Source: Neoechinorhynchus agilis
Lineage: Eukaryota > Animalia > Acanthocephala
Assembly: GCA_051530055.1 (NCBI GenBank)
Contig: CM121341.1
Coordinates: 6,736,784-6,800,783 of the forward strand
Reading direction: 5' to 3'
DNA: 64,000 nucleotides
Of the stretch, positions 453 through 18,739 are shown in pieces (the first letter of the stretch is position 1; each line of letters begins with the position of its first letter). Made by a program: the position numbers and the translations under genes. The notes under the pieces are model-generated. The model searched no databases. It was not told the origin of the DNA and saw only the letters and a list, made by a program, of their open reading frames with translations.

Positions 453-3400
453 CTCCATCTTATCAGCGTGCATTCTGTAGAGTTTTGCGATCTTTGTTCG
501 TTTCCTGGTTCTCACGTTATGTACGTATTGATTTTTGGTTAAAACACCTTGGTATATCCGAAGATAGGTCAATTGCCCGAATTTGCCAAGCTTCGTGGCA
601 AAAAAAAGAACTTGAACGCCATCAACTAATGTAGACTGGTTACCTCGAGTTTAAAGGCGAACGCCAATAACGGAGAGTCGGCCTCTCTGGAGGAATTGCA
701 ATTCACGTAAACCTTTTTATCATCACTACACAACCCCAAAGATAAGTCGTAATCGTCTTAACGATAAACTCACGTGCTTGCGTTATTATCGATAGCCTGA
801 TTGATTCGTTCGGAAGGATTAGGAAGAAAGTCGATAATCCCATTTAAGACGCATTGAACTCCTTTGTTCTTCAGCGCAGATCCAACGAATACTGGTACGA
901 ACTGTTGAGCAATGACGCTACGCCTGATGCTAGTTTTTAACCGATCCGTTTCCGGTCTGGTGTCATTTAATACCATTTCTCCGATTTCTTCGTCCGTCTC
1001 AGCGACGTGACCTACACTCGTTCAAATGGTTCATTGTTTTTAAGGAAATATACCTATCAGGTCATCTAACATATCACTCGCCTTCTCCCGGTATTCCAAT
1101 GGAATATCGTCCTCGACAATCTCTTCCCTTTCAAAAAACAAATCGTCCGAATATACATTAGAACTAGACTTTAGTACCCATATTGCCCTTTGAAATACAT
1201 CGCGCACTGCCTGATGAGATCAATAATCCCTGTTATCTCGCCCTCTTTTCCCATCAAAATGTTCATAAGCGCTACGTTTTTGTTCAAACGTCCCCTATAA
1301 AAATAGACATGTATTAATTAATCGATTGCGTATTTGACGGACTAAAGCCGCAAATTGAAGCAATTATTCTTAGTGAAATTGTGAAGAGTTGCAAAAAGGC
1401 GAAAAACGGCTATTTTAGACTCGAAAAATTGATCCGACATTTTTATAGCACTCTAGGGATTTTCAAGAATAAATTCTTTCAATTTTTCGAGCATAAAAAC
1501 ATGAACAATTACATCTTCAAACAATTTTAAAAATCGTGCGAACCTTATATCTCTCATCGTCCTGTTTACACTCGCATTTGGCCTGTCTAACTTATTGATG
1601 AAAATAAGGTGCGGAATAGAATATCGTTGGATTTGTCGGTGCACCGTCAATGTCTGACATTGAACTCCACTCGTTCCACAGACCACAAGAACGGCACCAT
1701 CCAGTACCCGCAAAGCCCGTTCGACTTCCACAGTGAAGTCCACGTGTCCAGGAGTGTCGATCAAATTAATGTTATGTTTCATCCATTCCACTGAAGTGGC
1801 TGCTGATTGAATGGTTATGCCACGTTGCCTCTCAAGTTCCATCGAGTCCATGGTGGCACCGACGCCATCCCGCCCTTTTACCTTCATGAACGAACAATTA
1901 AAATTTTGTTATTTTTTTGCTCTTCAACATAATTTCGAGGAAATACAAGGAGGTACAAAGGAGGGATGTAGTCTACGATGTTTCTTGTACCAAAAATGCA
2001 ACAGCAATTACATTGGACAAATAGGTCAGAATCTGAAGACGAGATTGGCGAAACATGAACGGTGGTTCATGACGACGAGGCTGGTACAAACTTTCCCTCA
2101 ATATCTAACGCAAATCTAAAACATGGTCGACCATGCGCTCTTGTGAGCGTAATGATCGGTTTATCCGCTAAAACTGATCACTAACCCGACGAAATTCGAA
2201 ACGTCTTCAACCTTCTCCACAAGACGAATACTAAAAAATATAAGTCAATTTTTTAACACTAAAAACAAATCGATCACGAACGAGACGAGGTTTGAAAAAT
2301 TCCTTTTTTACAAGATTTTCTCCACAGGACGAAGACGAAAAACTTTAACCAGCTTTTTAACACTAAAAACAAATCGATCGCGAATGAGGCGAGGTTCGAA
2401 GCGTCTTTTTTACAAGACGTTCTCCACAGGACGAAGACCAAAAAATATAAGTCAATTTTTTAACACTAAAAACAAATCGATCACGAACGAGGCGAGGTTC
2501 GAAAAATTCCTTTTTTACAAGACGTTCTCCACAGGACGAAAAACTTTAACCAGCTTTTTAACACTAAAAACAAATCGATCGCGAATGAGGCGAGGTTCGA
2601 AGCGTCTTTTTTACAAGACGTTCTCCACAGGACGAAGATCAAAAAATATAAGTCAATTTTTTAACACTAAAAACAAATCGATCACGAACGAGGCGAGGTT
2701 CGAAAAATTCCTTTTTTACAAGACTTTCTCCACAGGACGAAAAACTTTAACCAGCTTTTTAACACTAAAAACAAATCGATCGCGAATGAGGCGAGGTTCG
2801 AAGCGTCTTTTTTACAAGACGTTCTCCACAGGACGAAGACCAAAAACTTTAACCAACTTTTAAACACTAAAAACAAATTGATCACGAACGAGACGAGGTT
2901 CGAAAAATTCCTTTTTTACAAGATTTTCTCCACAGGACGAATACTAAAAAATATAAGTCAATTTTTAACACTAAAAAAACCGATCACGAACGAGGCGAGG
3001 TTCGAAAAATTCTTTTTTTACAAGGCGTTCTCCACAGGACGAAAAACTTTAACCAACTTTTAACACTAAAAAGAAATTGATCACGAACGAGGCGAGGTTC
3101 GAAAAATTCCTTTTTTACAAGACGTTCTCCACAGGACGAAAAACTTTAACCAGCTTTTTAACACTAAAAACAAACTGATCACGAACGAGACGAGGTTCGA
3201 AGTACCACTTACAAGACTTTCTCCACAAGACGAAGACCAAACCATCAAATTTTAGAGCTCTACTGACCTCGTGGATTTCAGCTATCCGACCGGCGTAAAA
3301 CAAGATCCGTTCGCTCAATGTAGTCTTTCCGGAGTCGATATGAGCACTCACTCCAACGTTGCGTATTAATTCAATAGGATATTGTTTCTGGAAGAGAAAT

Positions 3401-7802: not shown

Positions 7803-8304
7803 CTGATTGAACAACTTCTTTACAACATTATCTTATTGTTTCTATAATCAAAAACGCTTATTATCATAACCACGATTGCTGTTTTTTCAAAAAAACCATT
7901 CCGATTGTCTACAATGGAGTGCAGATTTACACTTGTATTGAGTTTAAAGAACGTCGGGGTCACTTGAACTTACTTTTTTATTTGAAATAATAACAATTTA
8001 TTTTTGCCTGCTGCGCGCTCGCTGAGCAAAAGGAGTAGTAGACGCCTCCTAGTGTATAACGTGGGAATCAATACCCTTCCGATAATAGAGATTTGAATGC
8101 GTCACAGTAAAATACTCACAAAAAAGAGATGCCTACTTATCTATAACAGTGATTTAAAATCCTTTATATAAAAGTCGTTTTCTGGTGTCATGCGAGCAGA
8201 GCAACAACGAAGTAAAAATGCAATAAAAAGAAGTTTGTTTGCGTTACACTTACATACCGACAAGAAGGTGAATATGTCCTTAATGTATCCGCCCAATTAA
8301 AAAC

Positions 8305-8703
8305 CCTTAATATAAAAGAGATTTGCTTACGTCAGACATAAAAATTAATCAAGACAATCGCATATGTGAAAGTGGGGAAAAATATGTATCCAAGAATCAC
8401 GACGTTTCACAATCAGGCAAATCACTATGAGGATATACCGTATCGTTTTTGCCGAACATGTAAAACTGCACAATATCGGCCAAACCAGCAGGTTTAGAAG
8501 CCTAATCACGTAAAACTGGGACTTAGTCTTCAAATAAAAGAGATTTACTGACGTCACATTCACAGATTATCATTAATGGGAAGATGCACAGTTCCGTCAT
8601 TTGAAGCCCTTAATATAAAAGAGATTTGCTTACGTCAAACTCAAAAACAAAATAGGAGGATTAGGTACCTAGTCTTCAAAATAAAAGAGGTTTGCTGACG
8701 TCT
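8305..8703. repeat. Four copies of a ~24-nt motif ATAAAAGAG(A/G)TTT(G/A)CT(T/G)ACGTC, arranged as a duplicated pair
   Basis: Copies at 8311, 8533, 8614 and 8680. Copies 1 and 3 are preceded by CCCTTAA; copies 2 and 4 by AGTCTTCAAA. Confidence 0.7.
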
Positions 8704-8749
8704 CATTCGCAGACCAAGAAATTTTAATTAACAACAAATATTAATCGTT

Positions 8750-11700
8750 TCAACAACCGTCGAAGCAATTTTGTTGCCTACATCTACTTCTAATAAGTTC
8801 TTTATAGTTATCTTCAGGGCAACACTGTCTTGGAAGGTCTTCATAGCATCCATCATAGTCACAAGCGTCAAAAAAATCATTGTCCAAATCGAAGTGTGTA
8901 TAATAGCTATCATGGACATGTTCAAAATCGTAGGTCACCCTTCTGACAACTTCGAGCTCAGCCATGCCTACTTCAAAATCAAGTGTATCAGACATGTCAG
9001 ACTTATCAACCAGCTTTTGAGATTTCTCAGTCATTAGCTGTCCATCGTTACCTATAGTAGGTTCCAAGTGCTCCGTTTCAAAGTGAAGCGAAGTGTCATT
9101 AGAAAACATATCCTCTTTAGAATTAATTAGAGGAGCTCTTGTGGTTACAGTAGAAGAAATATTGCATAATTCAAACCTCGAATGTGGTTCGGTATTAAAC
9201 GATTTAATATAATCTGTGAACAGAGGTGCCGGAAACTCCGTGGATGTTATTTTTCCATCTACAGTTTCGTCTAAGATTTTATGTGAATCCTCTGTAACCA
9301 CAGACAATATAGGCTCACTGACTGCGTCAGAATCCATCTTAACTTCCGACACTGCCTCTTGGGCGGGAATCCCGGATACAAAGGAGTTATTTATGTTTAA
9401 ATTGGATTCCGACGTCTCCTTCGTGTATTTTTCTGCTGCAACCGTGGTGGTATCGTCAAGAACTTCAGGGGACGGAATATTGTCAAATCCAGTTTTTAAC
9501 CTTGATCTTAACCCCAGTGGTTTCTGCAATCTACCGCACACCTCTAAACAATATTTTACGCAATTCAACCAATGCTCCATAACCATGTCGTGAACTTGAA
9601 GTTCTTGAAATTCCCGATTGCACTTAGCCTGGCAATAATACCGACAGTAACGACGCTTTTTCTTAATATAGAGCTGCATTTTATCAGTCGTTTTTGCTGG
9701 ATGCTCAACAGAATGATTGAACGTTGGAGTAGAAACATTATTATAAACGGACTTCATTCCATCCTCAACAGGCGCAGGGTACAATGAAGCATTTTCCATA
9801 TTTTCAACCTGCGACCTATTTTTTTTATTAAATACGATAGAGATGTTTTCAATTTCAGGAGATGCGGTTGTTTCGGAAGTTTCCGATTTCGAGGATGTCT
9901 TATAAACCTCAACCGGAAGAGTGTTTTCACTACTAACTACTCCGTCACTAAGGGCGTTTTGAGTTATTGCATCAGCTGAACTTCCCGGATTTCCGATTGT
10001 TTCTGAAGTTGCAGAAGTCGACGATGTCTCAAAAACCTCAACCGGAAGGGTGTTCTCGCTGCTGAACATTTGGCCCATCACGGCTTCTTGCGTGAATAAA
10101 TCAGCTGAGCCTTCCAGATTTGAGGTTGTTTCTGAACTTACAGAATTCGAGGTTGTCTTAAGAACCTCAACCGGAACTGTCGTTTCACTGATGACCATTC
10201 CGTCACTCACGTTCGTTTGAGTAGATCCACCAGCTGAGCTTTCCGGAATTGCGGTTGTTTCTGAACTTACAGAAGTCGATGTTGTCTCATAAACCCCAGC
10301 CGGAAGGGTGTTTTCGTTGCTGAACATTCGGCCCATTACGGCTCTTTGCGTGAATAAATCAGCTGAGCTTTCCGGATTTTCCGTTGTTTCTGAACTTACA
10401 GAATTCGAGGTTGTCTTAAGAACCTCAACCGGAAATGTCGTTTCACTGTTGACCATTCCGTCACTCACGTTCGTTTGAGTGGATCCACCAGCTGAGCTTT
10501 CCGGATTTGCGGTTGTTTCTGAACTTACAGAATTCGAGGTTGTCTTAAGAACCTCAACCGGAACTGTCGTTTCACTCTTGAGCATTCCGTCACTTACGTT
10601 CGTTTGAGTAGATCCACCAGCTGAACTTTCCGGATTTGCGGTTGTTTCTGAACTTACCGAAGTCGATGTTGTCTTAAGAACCTCAAATGGAACAGTCTTT
10701 TCACTGTTGACCATTCCGTCACTAACGTTCGTTTGAGTAGATCCACCAGCTGAGCTTTCCGGATTTGCGGTTGTTTCTGAACTTACAGAATTCGAGGTTG
10801 TCTTAAGAACCTCAGCCGGAACTGTCGTTTCACTGTTGATCATTCCGTCACTTACGTTCGTTTGAGTAGATCCACCAGCTGAGCTTTCCGGATTTGCGGT
10901 TGTTTCTGAACTTACAGAGGTCGAGGTTGTCTTAAGAACCTCAACCGGAACTGTCGTTTCACTCTTGACCATTCCGTCACTCACGTTCGTTTGAGTGGAT
11001 AAACCAGCTGAGCTTTCCGGATTTGCGGTTGTTTCTGAACTTACAGAGGTCGAGGTTGTCTTAAGAACCTCAGCCGGAACTGTCGTTTCACTGTTGACCA
11101 TTCCGTCACTTACGTTCGTTTGAGTAGATCCACCAGCTGAGCTTTCCGGATTTGCGGTTGTTTCTGAACTTACAGAATTCGAGGTTGTCTTAAGAACCTC
11201 AACCGGAACTGTCGTTTCACTGTTGACCATTCCGTCACTTACGTTCGTTTGAGTAGATCCACCAGCTGAGCTTTCCGGATTTGCGGTTGTTTCTGAACTT
11301 ACAGAATTCGAGGTTGTCTTAAGAACCTCAACCGGAACTGTCGTTTCACTGTTGACCATTCCGTCACTCACGTTCGTTTGAGTAGATCCACCAGCTGAGC
11401 TTTCCGGATTTGCGGTTGTTTCTGAACTTACAGAGGTCGAGGTTGTCTTAAGAACCTCAACCGGAACTGTCGTTTCACTGTTGACCATTCCGTCACTCAC
11501 GTTCGTTTGAGTAGATCCACCAGCTGAGCTTTCCGGATTTGCGGTTGTTTCTGAACTTACAGAATTCGAGGTTGTCTTAAGAACCTCCACCGGAACTGTC
11601 GTTTCACCCTTGACCATTCGCACTCACAGAGGTCGAGGTTGTCTTAAGAACCTCAACCGGAACTGTCGTTTCACTGTTGACAATTCCGCCACTCACGTTC

Positions 11701-14700
11701 GTTTGAGTAGATCCACCAGCTGAGCTTTCCGGATTTGCGGTTGTTTCTGAACTTACAGAAGTCGAGATTGTCTTAAGAACCTCAACCGGAACTGTCGTTT
11801 CACTGTTGACCATTCCGTCACTCACGTTCGTTTGAGTAGATCCACCAGCTGAGCTTTCCGGATTTGCGGTTGTTTCTGAACTTACAGAGGTCGAGGTTGT
11901 CTTAAGAACCTCAACCGGAACTGTCGTTTCACTGTTGACCATTCCGTCACTCACGTTCGTTTGAGTGGATCCACCAGCTGAGCTTTCCGGATTTGCGGTT
12001 GTTTCTGAACTTACAGAATTCGAGGTTGTCTTAAGAACCTCAACCGGAACTGTCGTTTCACTGTTGACCATTCCGTCACTTACGTTCGTTTGAGTAGATC
12101 CACCAGCTGAGCTTTCCGGATTTGCGGTTGTTTCTGAACTTACAGAATTCGAGGTTGTCTTAAGAACCTCAACCGGAACTGTCGTTTCACTGTTGACCAT
12201 TCCGTCACTCACGTTCGTTTGAGTGGATCCACCAGCTGAGCTTTCCGGATTTGCGGTTGTTTCTGAACTTACAGAGGTCGAGGTTGTCTTAAGAACCTCA
12301 ACCGGAACTGTCGTTTCACTCTTGACCATTCCGTCACTCACGTTCGTTTGAGTAGATCCACCAGCTGAGCTTTCCGGATTTGCGGTTGTTTCTGAACTTA
12401 CAGAAGTCGATGTTGTCTTAAGAACCTCAACTGGAACTGTCGTTTCACTGTTGACCATTCCGTCACTCACGTTCGTTTGAGTAGATCCACCAGCTGAGCT
12501 TTCCGGATTTGCGGTTGTTTCTGAACTTACAGAGGTCGAGGTTGTCTTAAGAACCTCAACCGGAACTGTCGTTTCACTGTTGACCATTCCGTCACTTACG
12601 TTCGTTTGAGTAGATCCACCAGCTGAGCTTTCCGGATTTGCGGTTGTTTCTGAACTTACAGAGGTCGAGGTTGTCTTAAGAACCTCAACCGGAACTGTCG
12701 TTTCACTGTTGACCATTCCGTCACTCACGTTCGTTTGAGTAGATCCACCAGCTGAGCTTTCCGGATTTGCGGTTGTTTCTGAACTTACAGAATTCGAGGT
12801 TGTCTTAAGAACCTCAACCGGAACTGTCGTTTCACTGTTGACCATTCCGTCACTCACGTTCGTTTGAGTAGATCCACCAGCTGAGCTTTCCGGATTTGCG
12901 GTTGTTTCTGAACTTACAGAAGTCGAGGTTGTCTTAAGAACCTCAACCGGAACTGTCGTTTCACTGTTGACCATTCCGTCACTCACGTTCGTTTGAGTAG
13001 ATCCACCAGCTGAGCTTTCCGGATTTGCGGTTGTTTCTGAACTTACAGAGTCGAGGTTGTCTTAAGAACCTCAACCGGAACTGTCGTTTCACTGTTGACC
13101 ATTCCGTCACTCACGTTCGTTTGAGTAGATCCACCAGCTGAGCTTTCCGGATTTGCGGTTGTTTCTGAACTTACAGAATTCGAGGTTGTCTTAAGAACCT
13201 CAACTGGAACTGTCGTTTCACTGTTGACCATTCCGTCACTGAAGTTCGTTTGAGTAGATCCACCAACTGAGCTTTCCGGATTTGTGGTTGTTTCTGAACT
13301 TACAGAATTCGAGGTTGTCTTAAGAACCTCAACCGGAACTGTCGTTTCACTGTTGACCATTCCGTCACTCACGTTCGTTTGAGTAGATCCACCAGCTGAG
13401 CTTTCCGGATTTGCGGTTGTTTCTGAACTTACAGAATTCGAGCTTGTCTTAAGAACCTCAACCGGAACTGTCGTTTCACTGTTGACCATTCCGCCACTCA
13501 CGTTCGTTTGAGTAGATCCACCAGCTGAGCTTTCCGGATTCGCGGTTGTTTCTGAACTTACAGAATTCGAGGTTGTCTTAAGAACCCCAGCCGGAAGGGT
13601 GTTTTCGTTGCTGAACATTCGACCCATTACGGCTCTTTGCGTGAATAAATCAGCTGAGCTTTCCAGATTTAAGGTTGTTTCTGAACTTACAGAATTCGAG
13701 GTTGTCTTAAGAACCTCAACCGCATCTGTCGTTTCACTGTTGACCATTCCGTCACTCACGTTCGTTTGAGTAGATCCACCAGCTGAGCTTCCTGGATTTT
13801 CGGTTGTTTCTGAACTTACAGAATTCGAGCTTGTCTTAAGAACCTCAACCGGAACTGTCGTTTCACTGTTGACCATTCCGCCACTCACGTTCGTTTGAGT
13901 AGATCCACCAGCTGAGCTTCCTGGATTTTCGGTTGTTTCTGAACTTACAGAATTCGAGCTTGTCTTAAGAACCTCAACCGGAACTGTCGTTTCACTGTTG
14001 ACCATTCCGCCACTCACGTCTGTTTGAGTAGATCCACCAGCTGAGCTTTCCGGATTTGCGGTTGTTTCTGAACTTACAGAATTCGAGGTTGTCTTAAGAA
14101 CCTCAACCGGAACTGTCGTTTCACTGTTGACCATTCCGTCACTCACGTCTGTTTGAGTAGATCCATCAGCTGAGCTTTCCGGATTTGCGGTTGTTTCTGA
14201 ACTTACAGAATTCGAGGTTGTCTTAAGAACCTCAACTGGAACAGTCTTTTCACTGTTGACCATTCCGTCACTCACGTTCGTTTGAGTAGATCCACCTGCT
14301 GAGCTTTCCGGATTTGTGGTTGTTTCTGAACTTACAGAAGTCGATGTTGTCTTAAGAACCTCAACCGAAAGGGTGTTTTCACTATTGGCCCTTCGCTCAC
14401 TCGCGGCGTTTTGAGTTAATGCATCAGCTGGGCTTTTCGGAGTTGAGGTTGTTTCTAAAGTTTGCAATGTCAAAGATGTCTTAAAAACCTCAATTTCCGG
14501 CGAATGGGAAACAAAATCGTCCCATAGGGGAATAATCGCAGCTTCCGTAATAGCTTTTTCAGCTGAAGAGTTTTGGTTGTTTGTTTTTAATTCCTGTTGA
14601 TTCATTGAATTTGTCTCATTCGCCATTTGACTATGTTTTCCATCCTTATTTGCTCGTTCATTACAATCGCCATTGCAAGCTCGTAAACATTTATGCCAAT

Positions 14701-17383
14701 TAAATCGCTTCCTTGTAGATTTATCACGATTGATATATTTTAAATAGCATTTTGCTTGGCACCGCGTAGGACAGTTTAACATTGCGGCATCTTTTTTCCA
14801 AAGTTGGTAATCTTTTATGGTCGGTTCTTGATTTTGAACTTCATTTTCCCTGCCTTTACATAATCTTCTACATGGCTCGACACAGTCATGGAAATTGAAT
14901 TTATCCTTTTCCGGCTCATCGACGGCTTGATATTTTCTATTGCATGTAAGCGTACATTTGCGATCACATCGCTGTGATGGATTATAGAAAAAGTTTAGAT
15001 ACATCTTTTGTTTTTTTGACATTGAACTAAATTCAAATCCGCGACTTACGATTTCTATTTCATTATTTAAATTCTCCATTTGACTATGTTTTCCATCCTT
15101 ATTTGCTCGTTCATTACAATCGCCATTGCAAGCTCGTAAACATTTATGCCAATTAAATCGCTTCCTTGTAGATTTATCACGATTGATATATTTTAAATAG
15201 CATTTTGCTTGGCACCGCGTAGGACAGTTTAACATTGCGGCATCTTTTTTCCAAAGTTGGTAATCTTTTATGGTCGGTTCTTGATTTTGAACTTCATTTT
15301 CCCTGCCTTTGCATAATCTTCTACATGGCTCGACACAGTCATGGAAATTGAATTTATCCTTTTCCGGCTCATCGACGGCTTGATATTTTCTATTGCATGT
15401 AAGCGTACATTTGCGATCACATCGCTGTGATGGATTATAGAAAAAGTTTAGATACATCTTTTGTTTTTTTGACATTGAACTAAATTCAAATCCGCGACTT
15501 ACGATTTCTATTTCATTATTTAAATTCTCCATTTGACTATGTTTTCCATCCTTATTTGCTCGTTCATTACAATCGCCATTGCAAGCTCGTAAACATTTAT
15601 GCCAATTAAATCGCTTCCTTGTAGATTTATCACGATTGATATATTTTAAATAGCATTTTGCTTGGCACCGCGTAGGACAGTTTAACATTGCGGCATCTTT
15701 TTTCCAAAGTTGGTAATCTTTTATGGTCGGTTCTTGATCTTGAACTTCATTTTCCGTGCCTTTGCATAATCTTCTACATGGCTCGACACAGTCATGGAAA
15801 TTGAATTTATCCTTTTCCGGCTCATCGACGGCTTGATATTTTCTATTGCATGTAAGCGTACATTTGCGATCACATCGCTGTGAAGGATTATAGAAAAAGT
15901 TTAGATACATCTTTTGTTTTTTTGACATCGAACTAAATTCAAATCTGCGACTTTCGGTTGCCAGATATCGTGGATCTCTTTTCTCGTTAAAATCCTGCTC
16001 TTCTAATCCGCTTTCGCAGCGGCGATTGCACGGTCTTATACAATTGCTCCATTGGAATGCACTTCTTCCTTTTTCATCCATGCTCCACCATTTCTTGTCA
16101 CAGTATTTTTGGCAGTCGCGATTACATCTATACGTTATAGATTTTCTATTGTCAACTTGACGGTCACTGGATTCTTTGTTTACTATTTGATTTTCATAAT
16201 CATGTTCCTCATTTTTCTCAAACTTTAATGATTTGTAACTTGGGATGCAATCTCTTAAGCAGTCATTCCATACCAACGCGCTCCTTTGCCTTTCGTTTAG
16301 CGTTAACCATTCTCTATAGCACCTCTCATGGCATTCTATGTAGTGGTCATCCGAGTGGAACATTGATTTTTTAACATTTTTTGAATCTTGTTTTCCTGCA
16401 TCTCTAAATCTCTGCACAGTCTTTGGTTCCGTGTCCTCGACCATTAATGTAGGCGCTGAGCTATCTTCATTCCATTCCTGATGATCGATACCGCTAGAAT
16501 ATACAAATTTTCCGCTTTTGGCCAATTTAGGGAAACACTTTTGCATACATCGTTGCCGGCAATCTTGAATTATATTTTTCTCATTGCGATGGTTTTCCAA
16601 GGGACAGTCGGATGTACAAGTTTTATAACATGCAGAACGTTGATTGCTTTTTAAATCGAATGAATGATTTTGAGACTTCGGTAGTGTTATGTAGCGTTTT
16701 CCCATCATTTCAGAATTTTGCTTATGTTTTCCTCCTTTGTACCATCTGCTCCAGCTTTCCTTGTAGCTTCCAGTTCGATAAATATACTCATTGTCTTTAG
16801 TTTTGAACTGTGCAATACAATCATCAGTACACGGAGAAATACATCTATGCCAGTTGAACAGTTTCCTTTGCTGCTTTGGTAATTTATCGTATTTATTCGA
16901 ACAACTATCGCTACATCTCTCATCGCATGATTGAATCAACATTTTCTCTGAATTTTTAAGCATATCATTGTTATCAGCGCTTTCTTTGCTCACAGTACCT
17001 CGGTGTAATTTTTGGCCGTTAAACTTTTCCTTTAATTTATAACAGTTTCCTTCTTTACACTTTTCAACACAGTCTTTAAACTTAACTTTGTTTTCTATAC
17101 CGTTTATTGACTCTCGACATTGTTTATCGCATTTTTCATGGCATAAATCGGTCGTTTCATTTGCATTCTTATGTTTGCTAAAAGTATTTGATTTTTGCTT
17201 TATGTAATCTTCTTGCCAGGATGTTCTTTTACAATTCGTTGCATTGCAACTTTTGAATGCTTTTCGATTATGATATTTGGAATCTCTATTACCATATTCT
17301 ATTGTATAAGATCTTCCATTTGCAAGTTGAATGGTCGGTCGTATTACTATAATCACAAACAAAGTCAAAACGCCGAAATTCAT
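8750..17383 (-). CDS. Giant intronless secreted protein (~2,880 aa if two frame breaks are repaired): signal peptide, Cys-hairpin modules, Ser/Thr-rich 43-aa repeats, Cys-rich C-terminus
   Basis: First ATG at 17383 (MNFGVLTLFVIIVIRP; the ORF-track start at 17410 is TTG). Three ORFs abut with breaks at ~13049 (1-nt loss) and ~11627 (partial unit). Confidence 0.88.
9880..14440 (-). repeat. Coding tandem array, 129-bp (43-aa) unit, ~35 copies including degenerate ends
   Basis: TGTCGTTTCAC at 11081 and 11210 gives a 129-bp period; unit VNSETTVPVEVLKTTS(T/N)SVSSETTANPESSAGGSTQTNVSDGM. Confidence 0.97.
14620..15960 (-). repeat. Three near-identical 453-bp (151-aa) coding repeats, each carrying two 6-Cys modules
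   Basis: GACAT.GAACTAAATTCAAATC at 15018, 15471 and 15924. Confidence 0.95.
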
Positions 17384-17804
17384 GGGAAGTACTGGGACTT
17401 TGTGCTTCAACTTTGTTATATATTTCGTTAATTAATCGCCGTTGAACAAACGGCGTTGCTTTAGTGACGCTGATCGATATAAGCAATCATTCACTGTCAC
17501 TATGGTCACAGAAACTTAGTTTGTGTAAATGCTTATATAGTGCAGAATTTTTTAATTTCAGTAGTGAAAAACCTTTCAATTTTACATTAGACGACGTATA
17601 TTTAAAATTTCAATGAGCATTTAATATGTTTTAAGCATATATATCGTCTATCTAATCACAATACGTTCACATTTAACAAAATTGCGATAAGACGCGCAAA
17701 TAATTCATTTAAATACCACAAATTAAAAAGTACAATTTTTCTATTAGCTACGTGAGTATTTAAAGTGTGAAACCAGTCGACTAAAGGTGATTACCATCCA
17801 CGTT

Positions 17805-18160
17805 CATAATCCTCCGGATCCGCCCTCCACCACTCCGGATCCGTCATCCACTCCAAATTTCCGGATCCGTCATCCACCACTCCGGATCCGTCATCCACTC
17901 CAAATTCCGGATCCGTCATCCACTCCAAATTCCTGATCCGTCATCCACTCCAAATTTCCGGATCCATCATCCACTCGAAATTCCAACTCCAACATCCACT
18001 CCAAATTCCGGATCCGTCATCCGCTCCGAATTTCCTGATCCGTCATCCACCACTCCGGATCCGTCATCCACTCTACTCCAAATTTCCGGATCCATCATCC
18101 ACTCGAAATTCCAACTCCAACATCCACTCCAAATTCCAGATCCGTCATATACTCGAAATT
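17805..18160. repeat. GC-richer minisatellite of ~21-25-bp units (CCGGATCCGTCATCCAC[CAC/TCCAAA])
   Basis: Repeated CCGGATCCGTCATCC core; variable unit length breaks any reading frame. Confidence 0.9.
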
Positions 18161-18739
18161 CAGGTGATCACGAGGACCCACAGGTACACGGTTCCTCTTC
18201 TTTATCAAAATAAAACGTGTTATTGTACTGAGAAGAAGTAAATCGGTTTAAATATTTTTCGAATTACACATAATTGAAATTTTGTGCTTTTATAAGATTC
18301 AATGGGTATTGCGTTTGTTAATCATGGCACTCATTATCAATGATATCCTTAGAGCAAGATGCGGTTTGAATCTTTTGAGTCAGATTTTCTCTTTTAAAAT
18401 TTTTTCAAATTAATAATTAATTGCGCGACGATTTAGAAGATTACAGTAGAAACTTCTATGAGCGAACAAAACAGATAACACTTAATAGTGGAGGCGAAAA
18501 CGACAACAGGCCTACAGTTCCGCTTGAAGATTGTATGATTGCCCCGAGATTCAAAACATGGACGTTAAATTGCTAAACTTTTGTTCATACTAAAACGAAA
18601 CTGCACTTCTCTTAATCCAACCGATCAATCTTTACTATTGTTTGGAATAAAATATTTGATTCTATTTCATCGTTTTAAAGATATTTGCCAGGAACGCTAA
18701 TTTTTTTATAAAAGTTAATATACGAGCGAAGGAGCATCT

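What the first reader, a model, noticed from the sequence alone, without database searches (positions are those of the whole stretch)
14620..17383. Giant secreted protein built from an unfamiliar C-x3-C-x3-C-x19-C-x3-C-x3-C module
Seen: after a signal peptide there are ten 6-Cys modules and one 4-Cys variant, and one more 6-Cys module lies beyond the mucin array. Nine of the eleven 6-Cys modules have exactly 19 residues between the Cys triads, usually with an aromatic (F/V/H)-x-(W/F) or HW motif just before the second triad (e.g. CDERCSDSC-SNKYDKLPKQQRKLFNWHR-CISPCTDDC; CRYYCQAKC-..EHWLN-CVKYCLEVC). Established: C-x3-C spacing puts Cys on one face of a helix (helical hairpins), and cnidarian minicollagen/NOWA CRDs use C-x3 spacing to polymerise by disulphide reshuffling. 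Inference: a lineage-specific disulphide-crosslinked wall, coat or adhesive protein (spore valve or polar capsule if the organism is myxozoan). I do not recognise the module as a named domain.
Basis: partly seen in the sequence, partly recalled or inferred. Interest (0 to 1): 0.82.

Follow-up and report, generated by a model that had tools for sequence, protein, structure and literature searches.

The report
Orphan disulphide-hairpin mucin of a thorny-headed worm

Summary
On the minus strand an ATG at 17383 opens a signal peptide, then ten 6-Cys modules and one 4-Cys variant. A 43-residue Ser/Thr-rich array of about 36 units follows, then a twelfth module and a Cys-rich tail, with the stop at 8750-8752.

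Three caveats:
- Six of the ten modules are three 99%-identical copies of one 453-nt two-module unit, so only eight modules are distinct.
- The first module's second triad is irregular (C-x3-C-x4-C).
- The roughly 2,880-residue protein exists only if two frame breaks in the array are assembly errors. That is plausible for an ONT-based assembly but not shown.

No Pfam family matches. A profile of the module, searched against 1.84 billion representative proteins, found credible relatives only in N. agilis: a twin pair with three modules plus a CAP domain, and one single-module protein. AlphaFold2 predicts a helix-loop-helix. The Cys pattern equals the published plant "6C alpha-hairpinin" motif, which I read as a structural analogue, not a homologue.

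RNA contigs of four runs cover both ends of the gene at high depth, and the transcript ends 44 nt after the stop.

My reading is a lineage-restricted secreted coat, gel or adhesive mucin. Tissue, sex bias and function remain untested. The organism is an acanthocephalan, not a myxozoan. Earlier scan notes on this genome describe other Cys-rich and mucin genes, none with this module.

The parts
17533..17539 (-). TATA-like box (TATATAA) about 150 nt upstream of the ATG
   Evidence: Read directly from the sequence. The transcription start site was not mapped.
17315..17383 (-). Start codon (17381-17383) and predicted signal peptide of 23 residues, with a hydrophobic core and an A-x-G cleavage-type end
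   Evidence: Translation. Judged by eye; no signal-peptide predictor was available.
17042..17143 (-). Module A: C-x3-C-x3-C, 15 residues, C-x3-C-x4-C (irregular second triad)
16817..16927 (-). Module B: canonical 6-Cys module with a 19-residue spacer
16535..16630 (-). Module C: 6-Cys module with a 14-residue spacer
16247..16333 (-). Module D: 4-Cys variant (C-x3-C, 19 residues, C-x3-C)
16016..16126 (-). Module E: canonical 6-Cys module with a 19-residue spacer
14618..15953 (-). 2.9 tandem copies of a 453-nt (151-residue) unit, each carrying modules F and G. Copies differ at 2-7 positions. F and G are canonical x19 modules at 15764-15874, 15569-15679, 15311-15421, 15116-15226, 14858-14968 and 14663-14773.
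   Evidence: Tandem Repeats Finder, pairwise differences, pattern scan
9863..14456 (-). Mucin-type array of about 36 units of 129 nt (43 residues; 21% Ser, 19% Thr, 14% Val; pI about 4)
13043..13050 (-). Frame break 1. One T is missing from a TT inside a 128-nt unit, which creates TAA at 13043-13045.
11578..11645 (-). Frame break 2. A truncated 67-nt unit has lost 62 nt between two GT(A/G)AGT motifs that lie 60 nt apart. With break 1 the loss totals 63 nt, so the first and last ORFs share a frame.
9536..9646 (-). Module L: canonical 6-Cys x19 module beyond the array
   Evidence: It is covered by RNA contigs, and one contig carries a synonymous change in a Cys codon.
8753..8863 (-). C-terminal Cys-rich tail: 7 Cys in the last 37 residues, including a CC pair. 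The stop TGA is at 8750-8752.
   Evidence: No Pfam family and no homologues.
8706..8749 (-). Short 3' UTR with ATTAAA at 8723-8728. RNA contigs of two runs end at 8706.

Best explanation
This is one intronless, highly transcribed gene of the acanthocephalan Neoechinorhynchus agilis, spanning about 17.5 kb to 8706 on the minus strand. It encodes a secreted mucin-type glycoprotein with four parts.

1. Head: after the signal peptide comes a basic region of about 950 residues (pI 9) built from eleven small modules separated by flexible linkers. Each module is a helix-loop-helix in which the two Cys triads lie on facing sides of antiparallel helices. They most likely form a ladder of three intramolecular disulphides, extended by an aromatic pair (Y/W/F four residues after Cys3, W/F three residues before Cys4).
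2. Middle: an acidic 43-residue Ser/Thr repeat of about 36 units that would be densely O-glycosylated and extended.
3. One further hairpin module.
4. An acidic C-terminal region ending in a Cys-rich tail.

I read it as an extracellular coat, gel or adhesive protein. The stapled hairpins would give a compact, protease-resistant cationic head. The glycosylated array would give a hydrated bottle-brush. The C-terminal cysteines, and attraction between the basic head and the acidic array, are the likeliest means of assembly between molecules.

Shown here: the anatomy, the transcription, the predicted helix-loop-helix secondary structure, and the finding of credible relatives only in N. agilis. Inferred: the disulphide pairing, the glycosylation, the reading through both frame breaks, and the function.
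For: Anatomy and statistics:
- Searches give 19 triads against 0.30 expected.
- All N-terminal cysteines but two lie in modules, and the Cys count is even.

Fold:
- AlphaFold2 on an 8-module alignment gives helices at residues 13-27 and 38-56, carrying the two triads. 27 of 59 residues reach pLDDT 90 or more, and the mean is 77.
- The two-module unit gives two separate hairpins with a linker below pLDDT 50 and pTM 0.38, i.e. beads on a string.
- The same Cys motif is a solved three-disulphide helix-loop-helix in the plant peptide nigellin-1.1 (paper PMC11591084).
- The only Foldseek PDB hits are two alpha-hairpinins, both weak.

Family:
- The profile search of 1.84 billion representatives returns N. 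agilis secreted proteins as its only credible hits: P0001 (its near-identical twin P0004 shares the cluster) with three modules plus a CAP domain, and P0002 with one module.
- The module is therefore a reusable extracellular unit.

Expression:
- Contigs of four RNA runs hold 72-85% of the sampled words of 15954-17500.
- They cover 8706-9900 at word depth 165-470. The adjacent intergenic stretch, about 8629-8705, is uncovered in all four runs (8542-8655 in three), so DNA carry-over is unlikely.
- Contigs of two runs end at 8706, 17 nt after ATTAAA.

Composition: head pI 9.0, repeat pI 4.05 with 40% Ser+Thr, C-terminal region pI 4.8.
Against: - No experiment or tissue- or sex-resolved expression supports any function.
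- The model coordinates could not be inspected, so the disulphide geometry is unverified.
- Two frame breaks interrupt the array. If they are real, the product stops after about 1,446 residues and lacks the twelfth module and the Cys-rich tail.
- No VWD, CTCK or other known mucin polymerisation domain is present.
- The assembly mechanism is conjecture.
Confidence: 0.55

Rival explanations
1. It is a sex-specific reproductive matrix protein. One option is the male copulatory cement (cap). The other is an egg-envelope or fibril component made in females. This is a special case of the structural reading rather than a contradiction of it.
For: - Word depth is very high in whole-worm poly-A RNA.
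- Established knowledge, not tested here: the mating plug of C. elegans is built from a mucin (PLG-1), acanthocephalan males seal females with a secreted proteinaceous cement, and acanthocephalan egg envelopes are described as disulphide-rich.
- A paralogue carries a CAP domain. In other animals that family is frequent in reproductive-tract secretions.
Against: The sex of the four RNA runs is unknown. The N. agilis transcriptome paper does not mention mucins, or cement or eggshell proteins, among its results.
Confidence: 0.3
2. It is a polyprotein precursor. Like the multi-module precursors of plant alpha-hairpinins, the head would be cut into single hairpin peptides that act as protease inhibitors or antimicrobial peptides in the fish gut.
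For: - The Cys motif and predicted fold match 6C alpha-hairpinins. According to PMC11591084, some of those are trypsin inhibitors or antimicrobials.
- The head is strongly basic (pI 9).
- The worm lives bathed in host proteases and microbes (established biology).
Against: - No conserved processing site flanks the modules. The unique 613 residues hold only 4 R-x-x-R and 17 dibasic sites, and none recurs at module borders.
- The modules are fused to a mucin array and, in the paralogue, to a CAP domain. That fits a structural module.
- No sequence homology to any alpha-hairpinin was found.
Confidence: 0.1
3. The frame breaks are real. The gene is then truncated or decaying: translation stops at 13043, giving about 1,446 residues (head plus about 12 repeats). 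The remaining 4.3 kb, including module L, would be untranslated.
For: The assembly as given carries a 1-nt and a 62-nt loss inside the array.
Against: - Downstream of the breaks, 460 and 957 codons stay open in the repeat's own frame. About 370 of those codons are unique, AT-rich sequence ending in a proper stop, a poly(A)-type signal and the transcript end.
- The assembly rests on ONT R9.4 reads from a pool of about 50 worms, polished with short reads (PMC12690905). Short reads cannot be placed in 36 near-identical units.
- The second break looks like an in-frame 60-nt unit-internal deletion plus two single-base losses, which is typical of residual long-read error.
Confidence: 0.2
4. The cysteine triads bind metals as thiolates instead of forming disulphides. 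The protein would then contribute to the well-known heavy-metal accumulation of acanthocephalans.
For: The head is 6.9% Cys, arranged in regular triads. Acanthocephalans accumulate metals (abstracts).
Against: - A signal peptide sends the protein through the oxidising secretory pathway.
- The i, i+4, i+8 spacing on two facing helices is the geometry of disulphide-stapled hairpins, not of metallothionein-type C-x-C or C-C clusters.
- The Cys count is even and modular.
Confidence: 0.04

Closest known systems
Plant alpha-hairpinins of the 6-Cys class (for example nigellin-1.1, PDB 2NB2; vicilin-buried peptides such as the Pis v 3 leader, PDB 7UV4)
   Same: - The cysteine motif is identical in form: CX3CX3C-X(4-20)-CX3CX3C.
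- Both are helix-loop-helix. The plant fold is solved, and the one here is predicted.
- Both occur as several modules in one precursor.
- They are the only Foldseek PDB hits of the model.
   Different: - There is no detectable sequence relationship (nigellin E = 2.5), and the Foldseek E-values of 6-8 are not significant.
- The loop here has 19 residues, whereas the commonest plant spacing is 10.
- The host here is an animal.
- The modules are embedded in a mucin of about 2,880 residues, or fused to a CAP domain, with no conserved processing sites.
- Convergence is the most likely explanation.
Twin CX3C / CHCH disulphide-stapled helical hairpins (small Tim proteins such as Tim9)
   Same: Cysteines spaced i, i+4 on two antiparallel helices staple a hairpin. 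Tim9 is the top, non-significant, PDB sequence hit.
   Different: Those are proteins of the mitochondrial intermembrane space, with two disulphides and no signal peptide. This module has three disulphides, is secreted and is tandemly repeated.
Pfam PF02363 C_tripleX (nematode C-x3-C-x3-C cysteine-rich repeat)
   Same: Both have the C-x3-C-x3-C spacing and occur in secreted invertebrate proteins. It appeared as a weak lead in the atlas and AFDB searches.
   Different: The HMM score is 8.8 bits against a cut-off of 22.9. C_tripleX is a short continuous repeat, not two triads separated by a 19-residue aromatic-bearing loop.
Cnidarian minicollagen / NOWA cysteine-rich domains
   Same: Both use C-x3 spacing and belong to extracellular structural proteins.
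   Different: Those domains pack six Cys into about 20 residues ending in CC, are not helical hairpins, and polymerise by disulphide reshuffling. Here the two triads are 19 residues apart and all Cys can pair within a module.
Gel-forming mucins (VWD-C8-TIL head, PTS repeats, CTCK tail), and the C. elegans plug mucin PLG-1 as a functional analogue
   Same: The overall plan matches: signal peptide, Cys-rich head, long Ser/Thr tandem-repeat centre in one large exon, Cys-rich C-terminus.
   Different: No VWD, C8 or CTCK domains are present, and TIL scores only 11-13 bits against a cut-off of 24.5. The head is built from an unrelated module.

Membership tests
alpha-hairpinin (6C class) | Cys motif CX3CX3C-X4-20-CX3CX3C | tested here: met
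   Regex scans against the motif definition in PMC11591084. Ten of the eleven 6-Cys modules fit, with spacers of 14 or 19 residues. Module A does not, because its second triad is C-x3-C-x4-C.
alpha-hairpinin (6C class) | Helix-loop-helix fold stapled by disulphides | tested here: inconclusive
   AlphaFold2 predicts helix-loop-helix with the triads on the two long helices. The coordinates could not be inspected for S-S geometry. Foldseek hits to 7UV4 and 2NB2 have E = 6-8 only.
alpha-hairpinin (6C class) | Sequence relationship to known members | tested here: not met
   Module profile against PDB sequences: nigellin-1.1 at E = 2.5, 11 bits. The 1.84-billion-protein search returned no plant hit.
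alpha-hairpinin (6C class) | Small plant defence peptide released from a precursor | tested here: not met
   The gene belongs to an animal. The modules sit inside a giant mucin or next to a CAP domain, and no recurrent processing sites flank them.
Pfam C_tripleX (PF02363) | Score at or above the Pfam gathering threshold | tested here: not met
   Best score 8.8 bits against 22.9. It is absent from the whole-head scan.
Minicollagen / NOWA CRD | Six Cys within about 20 residues, CX3CX3CX3CX3CC | tested here: not met
   The triads are separated by 14-19 residues and no module contains CC.
Gel-forming mucin | VWD/C8/TIL assemblies and a C-terminal cystine knot | tested here: not met
   Pfam gives no VWD, C8 or CTCK. 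TIL scores 11-13 bits against a cut-off of 24.5.
Gel-forming mucin | Long Pro/Thr/Ser-type tandem-repeat domain | tested here: met
   About 36 units of 43 residues with 40% Ser+Thr. Glycosylation itself was not testable.
Twin CX3C small Tim (PF02953) | HMM match and intermembrane-space localisation without a signal peptide | tested here: not met
   No Pfam hit. Tim9 scores E = 1.4. A signal peptide is present.
New N. agilis hairpin-module family (this gene, P0001/P0004, P0002) | C-x3-C-x3-C, aromatic at Cys3+4, W/F at Cys4-3, C-x3-C-x3-C, in proteins with a signal peptide | tested here: met
   Profile hits P0001 at E = 6e-11 (three stretches) and P0002 at E = 1e-4. Alignment of 12 modules. Source names and genomic loci.

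The most novel reading that the evidence does not exclude
The module is a new animal extracellular domain family that arose independently of the plant 6-Cys alpha-hairpinins. Arrayed on a mucin stalk, it would give the gutless parasite either a cationic protease-inhibiting or antimicrobial armour at the host interface, or the structural protein of the acanthocephalan copulatory cement or egg fibrils. No gene is known for either of those materials.
Probability: 0.15. Interest if true: 0.7.

Novelty: new variant of a known kind. Interest (0 to 1): 0.45.

Why it matters
- It defines an expressed domain family with credible hits only in N. agilis. I found no description of it in the databases and papers searched. 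There are twelve distinct modules in three kinds of N. agilis secreted protein.
- It appears to be an animal example, probably convergent, of the triple-disulphide alpha-hairpin known from plant defence peptides.
- No product of this locus appeared among the profile hits, although the annotated paralogues did. The published annotation may therefore miss the gene, possibly because of the frame breaks.
- Acanthocephalan surface coats, egg envelopes and copulatory cement have no molecular description. A highly expressed giant secreted mucin is a concrete candidate for one of them.
- The small, probably very stable module is easy to express and to solve.
- It does not open a long-standing general question, and the function is still unknown.

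Tried and rejected
Sequence searches that found nothing:
- Pfam scans of the head, the single modules, the C-terminal region and the paralogues gave only sub-threshold noise: ARM_CUL7_CUL9 with no stretch passing on its own, plus TIL and C_tripleX.
- Word-indexed searches of 5.8 billion protein clusters found no relatives. I tried the head, the N-terminal half of P0001, which found only itself, and the C-terminal 368 residues.
- P0003, an ENA metagenome repeat protein with single CRSAC-type triads, is most likely a spurious profile hit.

Fold and feature searches that gave only generic results:
- AFDB clusters, the ESM Atlas shape search and the VIA-align wide PDB search returned only generic helical hairpins, all at Z 5 or less or E above 2.
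- Atlas feature searches scored no higher than 0.66. Their weak leads were C_tripleX, Ole e 6 and ShK. ShK for the C-terminal tail was not backed by Pfam.

Other dead ends:
- Six-frame scans found no further modules within 10 kb on either side of the two paralogous loci, nor elsewhere in the window.
- Literature searches on acanthocephalan mucins, cement and egg envelopes found no molecular candidates.
- The idea that the two frame breaks mark an intron, because every unit contains GTAAGT, was considered and could not be tested. Contigs cannot resolve the array.
- The sex and tissue of expression could not be determined. Run identities were coded, and each read tool allowed only one call.

Full report
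**What is in the sequence**

The finding lies on the minus strand. One ORF runs from 17410 to 13043 (1,455 codons). Its first ATG is at 17383, about 150 nt below a TATATAA box. It opens a 23-residue hydrophobic N-terminus with an A-x-G end, which I read by eye as a signal peptide.

A regular-expression scan places 6-Cys modules at ORF residues 90, 162, 261, 429, 513, 578, 664, 729, 815 and 880. A 4-Cys variant sits at residue 360. Eight of the ten have exactly 19 residues between the triads. The module at 261 has 14. The module at 90 has 15 and ends C-x3-C-x4-C.

Two further ORFs in the same direction continue the Ser/Thr array: 12986-11604 and 11623-8750. The last one carries a twelfth canonical x19 module at 9536-9646. 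It then has an acidic region of about 260 residues and a tail with 7 Cys in 37 residues before TGA at 8750-8752.

**Is it more than chance?**

Shuffling the 943 mature head residues 20,000 times gives a mean of 0.30 C-x3-C-x3-C triads (maximum 5), against 19 observed. It gives 0.00015 exact x19 modules against 8 observed. In the non-duplicated 613 residues the figures are 11 against 0.18 and 4 against 0.

The six-frame translation of the whole 64-kb window has the pattern only in this gene. All 66 head cysteines but two (a C-x4-C pair near the N-terminus) belong to modules.

**Important qualifications**

Residues 513-916 are 2.9 tandem copies of a 453-nt unit that carries two modules. The copies differ at only 2-7 positions. 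The gene therefore has eight distinct modules: seven 6-Cys and one 4-Cys.

The array consists of about 36 units of exactly 129 nt, with two exceptions:
- A 128-nt unit has one T missing from a TT, which creates TAA at 13043-13045.
- A 67-nt unit has lost 62 nt between two GT(A/G)AGT motifs that lie 60 nt apart.

The two losses total 63 nt, so the first and last ORFs are in the same frame. Between them the repeat reads correctly only in another frame.

The published assembly rests on ONT R9.4 reads from a pool of about 50 worms, polished with short reads (PMC12690905). Single-base losses in 36 near-identical units are what such an assembly leaves behind. The 1,417 codons beyond the first break stay open. 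About 370 of them are unique, AT-rich sequence ending in a proper stop, an ATTAAA and the transcript end. I therefore think the full-length product of about 2,880 residues is real (about 0.8), but this is not shown. I searched the pieces separately and never joined them.

**Organism**

Earlier notes of this scan name the genome as Neoechinorhynchus agilis, a thorny-headed worm of mullets. This fits two results here. The two credible profile hits outside the window (P0001 and P0002; a twin, P0004, shares P0001's cluster) are NCBI proteins of N. agilis. RNA contigs from 2025 runs also match the window at 99% or more.

**Expression**

Contigs of four RNA runs hold 72-85% of the sampled words of 15954-17500. 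I laid the same runs on 8200-9900:
- They cover 8706-9900 and run on into the array, at assembler word depth 165-470.
- The adjacent intergenic stretch, about 8629-8705, is uncovered in all four runs (8542-8655 in three), so the signal is unlikely to be DNA carry-over.
- A separate weak transcript at 8226-8628 (depth 3-10) has its own GT-AG intron.
- Contigs of two runs end at 8706, 44 nt after the stop and 17 nt after ATTAAA.
- No joints or indels were seen in the C-terminal part.
- Four contig variants were seen. Two are synonymous, one of them in a module Cys codon, and two are conservative or non-conservative replacements. That is too few for any test of selection.

Both ends of the gene are thus highly transcribed in the same worms, as expected of one mRNA of about 8.8 kb. 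The run list appears capped at four per study and the identities are coded, so nothing can be said about sex or stage.

**Relatives**

Pfam finds nothing real in the head, the single modules or the C-terminus. C_tripleX scores 8.8 bits against a cut-off of 22.9, and TIL scores 11-13 bits against 24.5. Word-indexed searches of 5.8 billion clusters found nothing.

A profile of the eight distinct modules (alignment A1) was scored against all 1.84 billion representative proteins. It gave three hits at E of 0.001 or below:
- P0001 (405 residues, E = 6e-11, three matched stretches) has a signal peptide, three modules (spacers 19, 12 and 19) and a CAP domain (PF00188, E = 3e-17). One search shows a 98%-identical twin, P0004, in the same cluster, encoded elsewhere on the same scaffold.
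- P0002 (145 residues, E = 1e-4) has a signal-like N-terminus and one x19 module.
- P0003 is a metagenomic repeat protein with lone triads, which I regard as spurious.

No product of the window's own locus appeared among the hits. The gene may therefore be missing from the deposited annotation.

Aligning all twelve distinct modules gives four invariant and two nearly invariant Cys. W/F three residues before Cys4 is conserved in at least 70% of them. By eye there is also an aromatic four residues after Cys3, which continues the i+4 stripe of the first helix. The module is thus a lineage-restricted, reusable extracellular unit, as far as present databases show.

**Fold**

AlphaFold2 on alignment A1 gives mean pLDDT 77, with 27 of 59 residues at 90 or more. 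It predicts helices at 13-27 and 38-56, carrying the two triads, joined by a loop with one short turn.

The 138-residue two-module unit gives two such hairpins (pLDDT 76-82) joined by a linker below 50, with pTM 0.38. That means independent beads on a string. I could not inspect the coordinates, so the 1-6, 2-5, 3-4 disulphide ladder is inferred from the geometry and from the analogue below.

Foldseek against the PDB returns only two hits, both alpha-hairpinins: the Pis v 3 vicilin leader 7UV4 and nigellin-1.1 2NB2, at E = 6-8. The profile search of PDB sequences is likewise non-significant, topped by Tim9, nigellin-1.1 and Ole e 6. The other structure libraries give only generic hairpins.

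**Comparison with what is known**

The paper PMC11591084 defines a plant "6C alpha-hairpinin" motif, CX3CX3C-X4-20-CX3CX3C. It cites nigellin-1.1 as a solved 6-Cys helix-loop-helix, and it notes trypsin-inhibiting and antimicrobial members. Its commonest spacer is 10 residues.

The worm module meets that motif (spacers 14 and 19) and the predicted fold. It fails on sequence relationship, taxon and context. I file it as a structural analogue, probably convergent, and not as a member.

It is also not a member of C_tripleX, minicollagen/NOWA CRDs, twin-CX3C Tims or the gel-forming mucin domain set, although the overall plan (Cys-rich head, Ser/Thr repeats in one exon, Cys-rich tail) parallels gel-forming mucins.

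**How it most likely works**

The head is basic (pI 9.0; 12% Lys, 8% Arg). The repeat is acidic (pI about 4; 40% Ser+Thr), and so is the C-terminal region (pI 4.8).

My reading, with the function part at about 0.5, is as follows. Intramolecularly stapled hairpins make a compact, protease-resistant cationic head on a long O-glycosylated stalk. Assembly into a coat, gel or glue would use the eight non-module C-terminal cysteines, or head-to-array charge attraction, or both.

Which matrix it builds is open. The tegument surface coat, the egg envelope and the male copulatory cement are all candidates. Sex-resolved counts from the existing 66 libraries would decide between them.

Rivals are a processed precursor of inhibitor or antimicrobial hairpins (no conserved cleavage sites), a truly truncated gene, and metal binding.

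**Verdict**

The finding is real, expressed and correctly described. It is wrong on the organism, and it goes too far in two places: calling the cysteine pattern unfamiliar, and proposing intermolecular cross-linking.

I rate it a new variant of a known kind, a disulphide-stapled alpha-hairpin used here as a tandem animal extracellular module. Interest is moderate because the function is unknown.

Noticed in passing
window 17813-18161: About 13 degenerate tandem copies of a 25-nt unit (TCCGGATCCGTCATCCACTCCAAAT) lie roughly 400-800 nt upstream of the mucin gene's ATG. No ORF of 60 codons or more overlaps them. They could be a promoter-proximal satellite or a regulatory repeat.
   Followed up: no
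window 8226-8628: A separate, weakly expressed transcript (word depth 3-10 in three runs) lies just downstream of the mucin gene. It has a 51-nt GT-AG intron at 8265-8315. By eye the region also holds three direct repeats of about 70 nt, each containing GACGTCAG.
   Followed up: partly
window 13043-13050 and 11578-11645: The two frame-breaking losses in the mucin array (1 nt and 62 nt) add up to 63 nt, so the flanking ORFs share a frame. Every 129-nt unit also contains GTAAGT and GTGAGT, which resemble splice donors. Whether this is an assembly artefact, an allele or something spliced could not be resolved.
   Followed up: partly
window 2384-2863: The plus-strand ORF here is made of about 2.3 tandem copies of a unit of roughly 66 residues. 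It is probably a non-coding tandem repeat that happens to be open.
   Followed up: no
L001 10001-11218 (CM121341.1 of GCA_051530055.1): This single-exon gene encodes a secreted protein with three hairpin modules fused to a CAP (SCP/CRISP-type) domain. A 98%-identical twin (P0004) lies about 15 genes away by locus tag on the same scaffold. All seven differences between the twins avoid the cysteines.
   Followed up: partly
window 1453-1887: A minus-strand ORF fragment looks like the GTP-binding domain of a translation elongation factor G-type GTPase, probably one exon of a larger gene.
   Followed up: no
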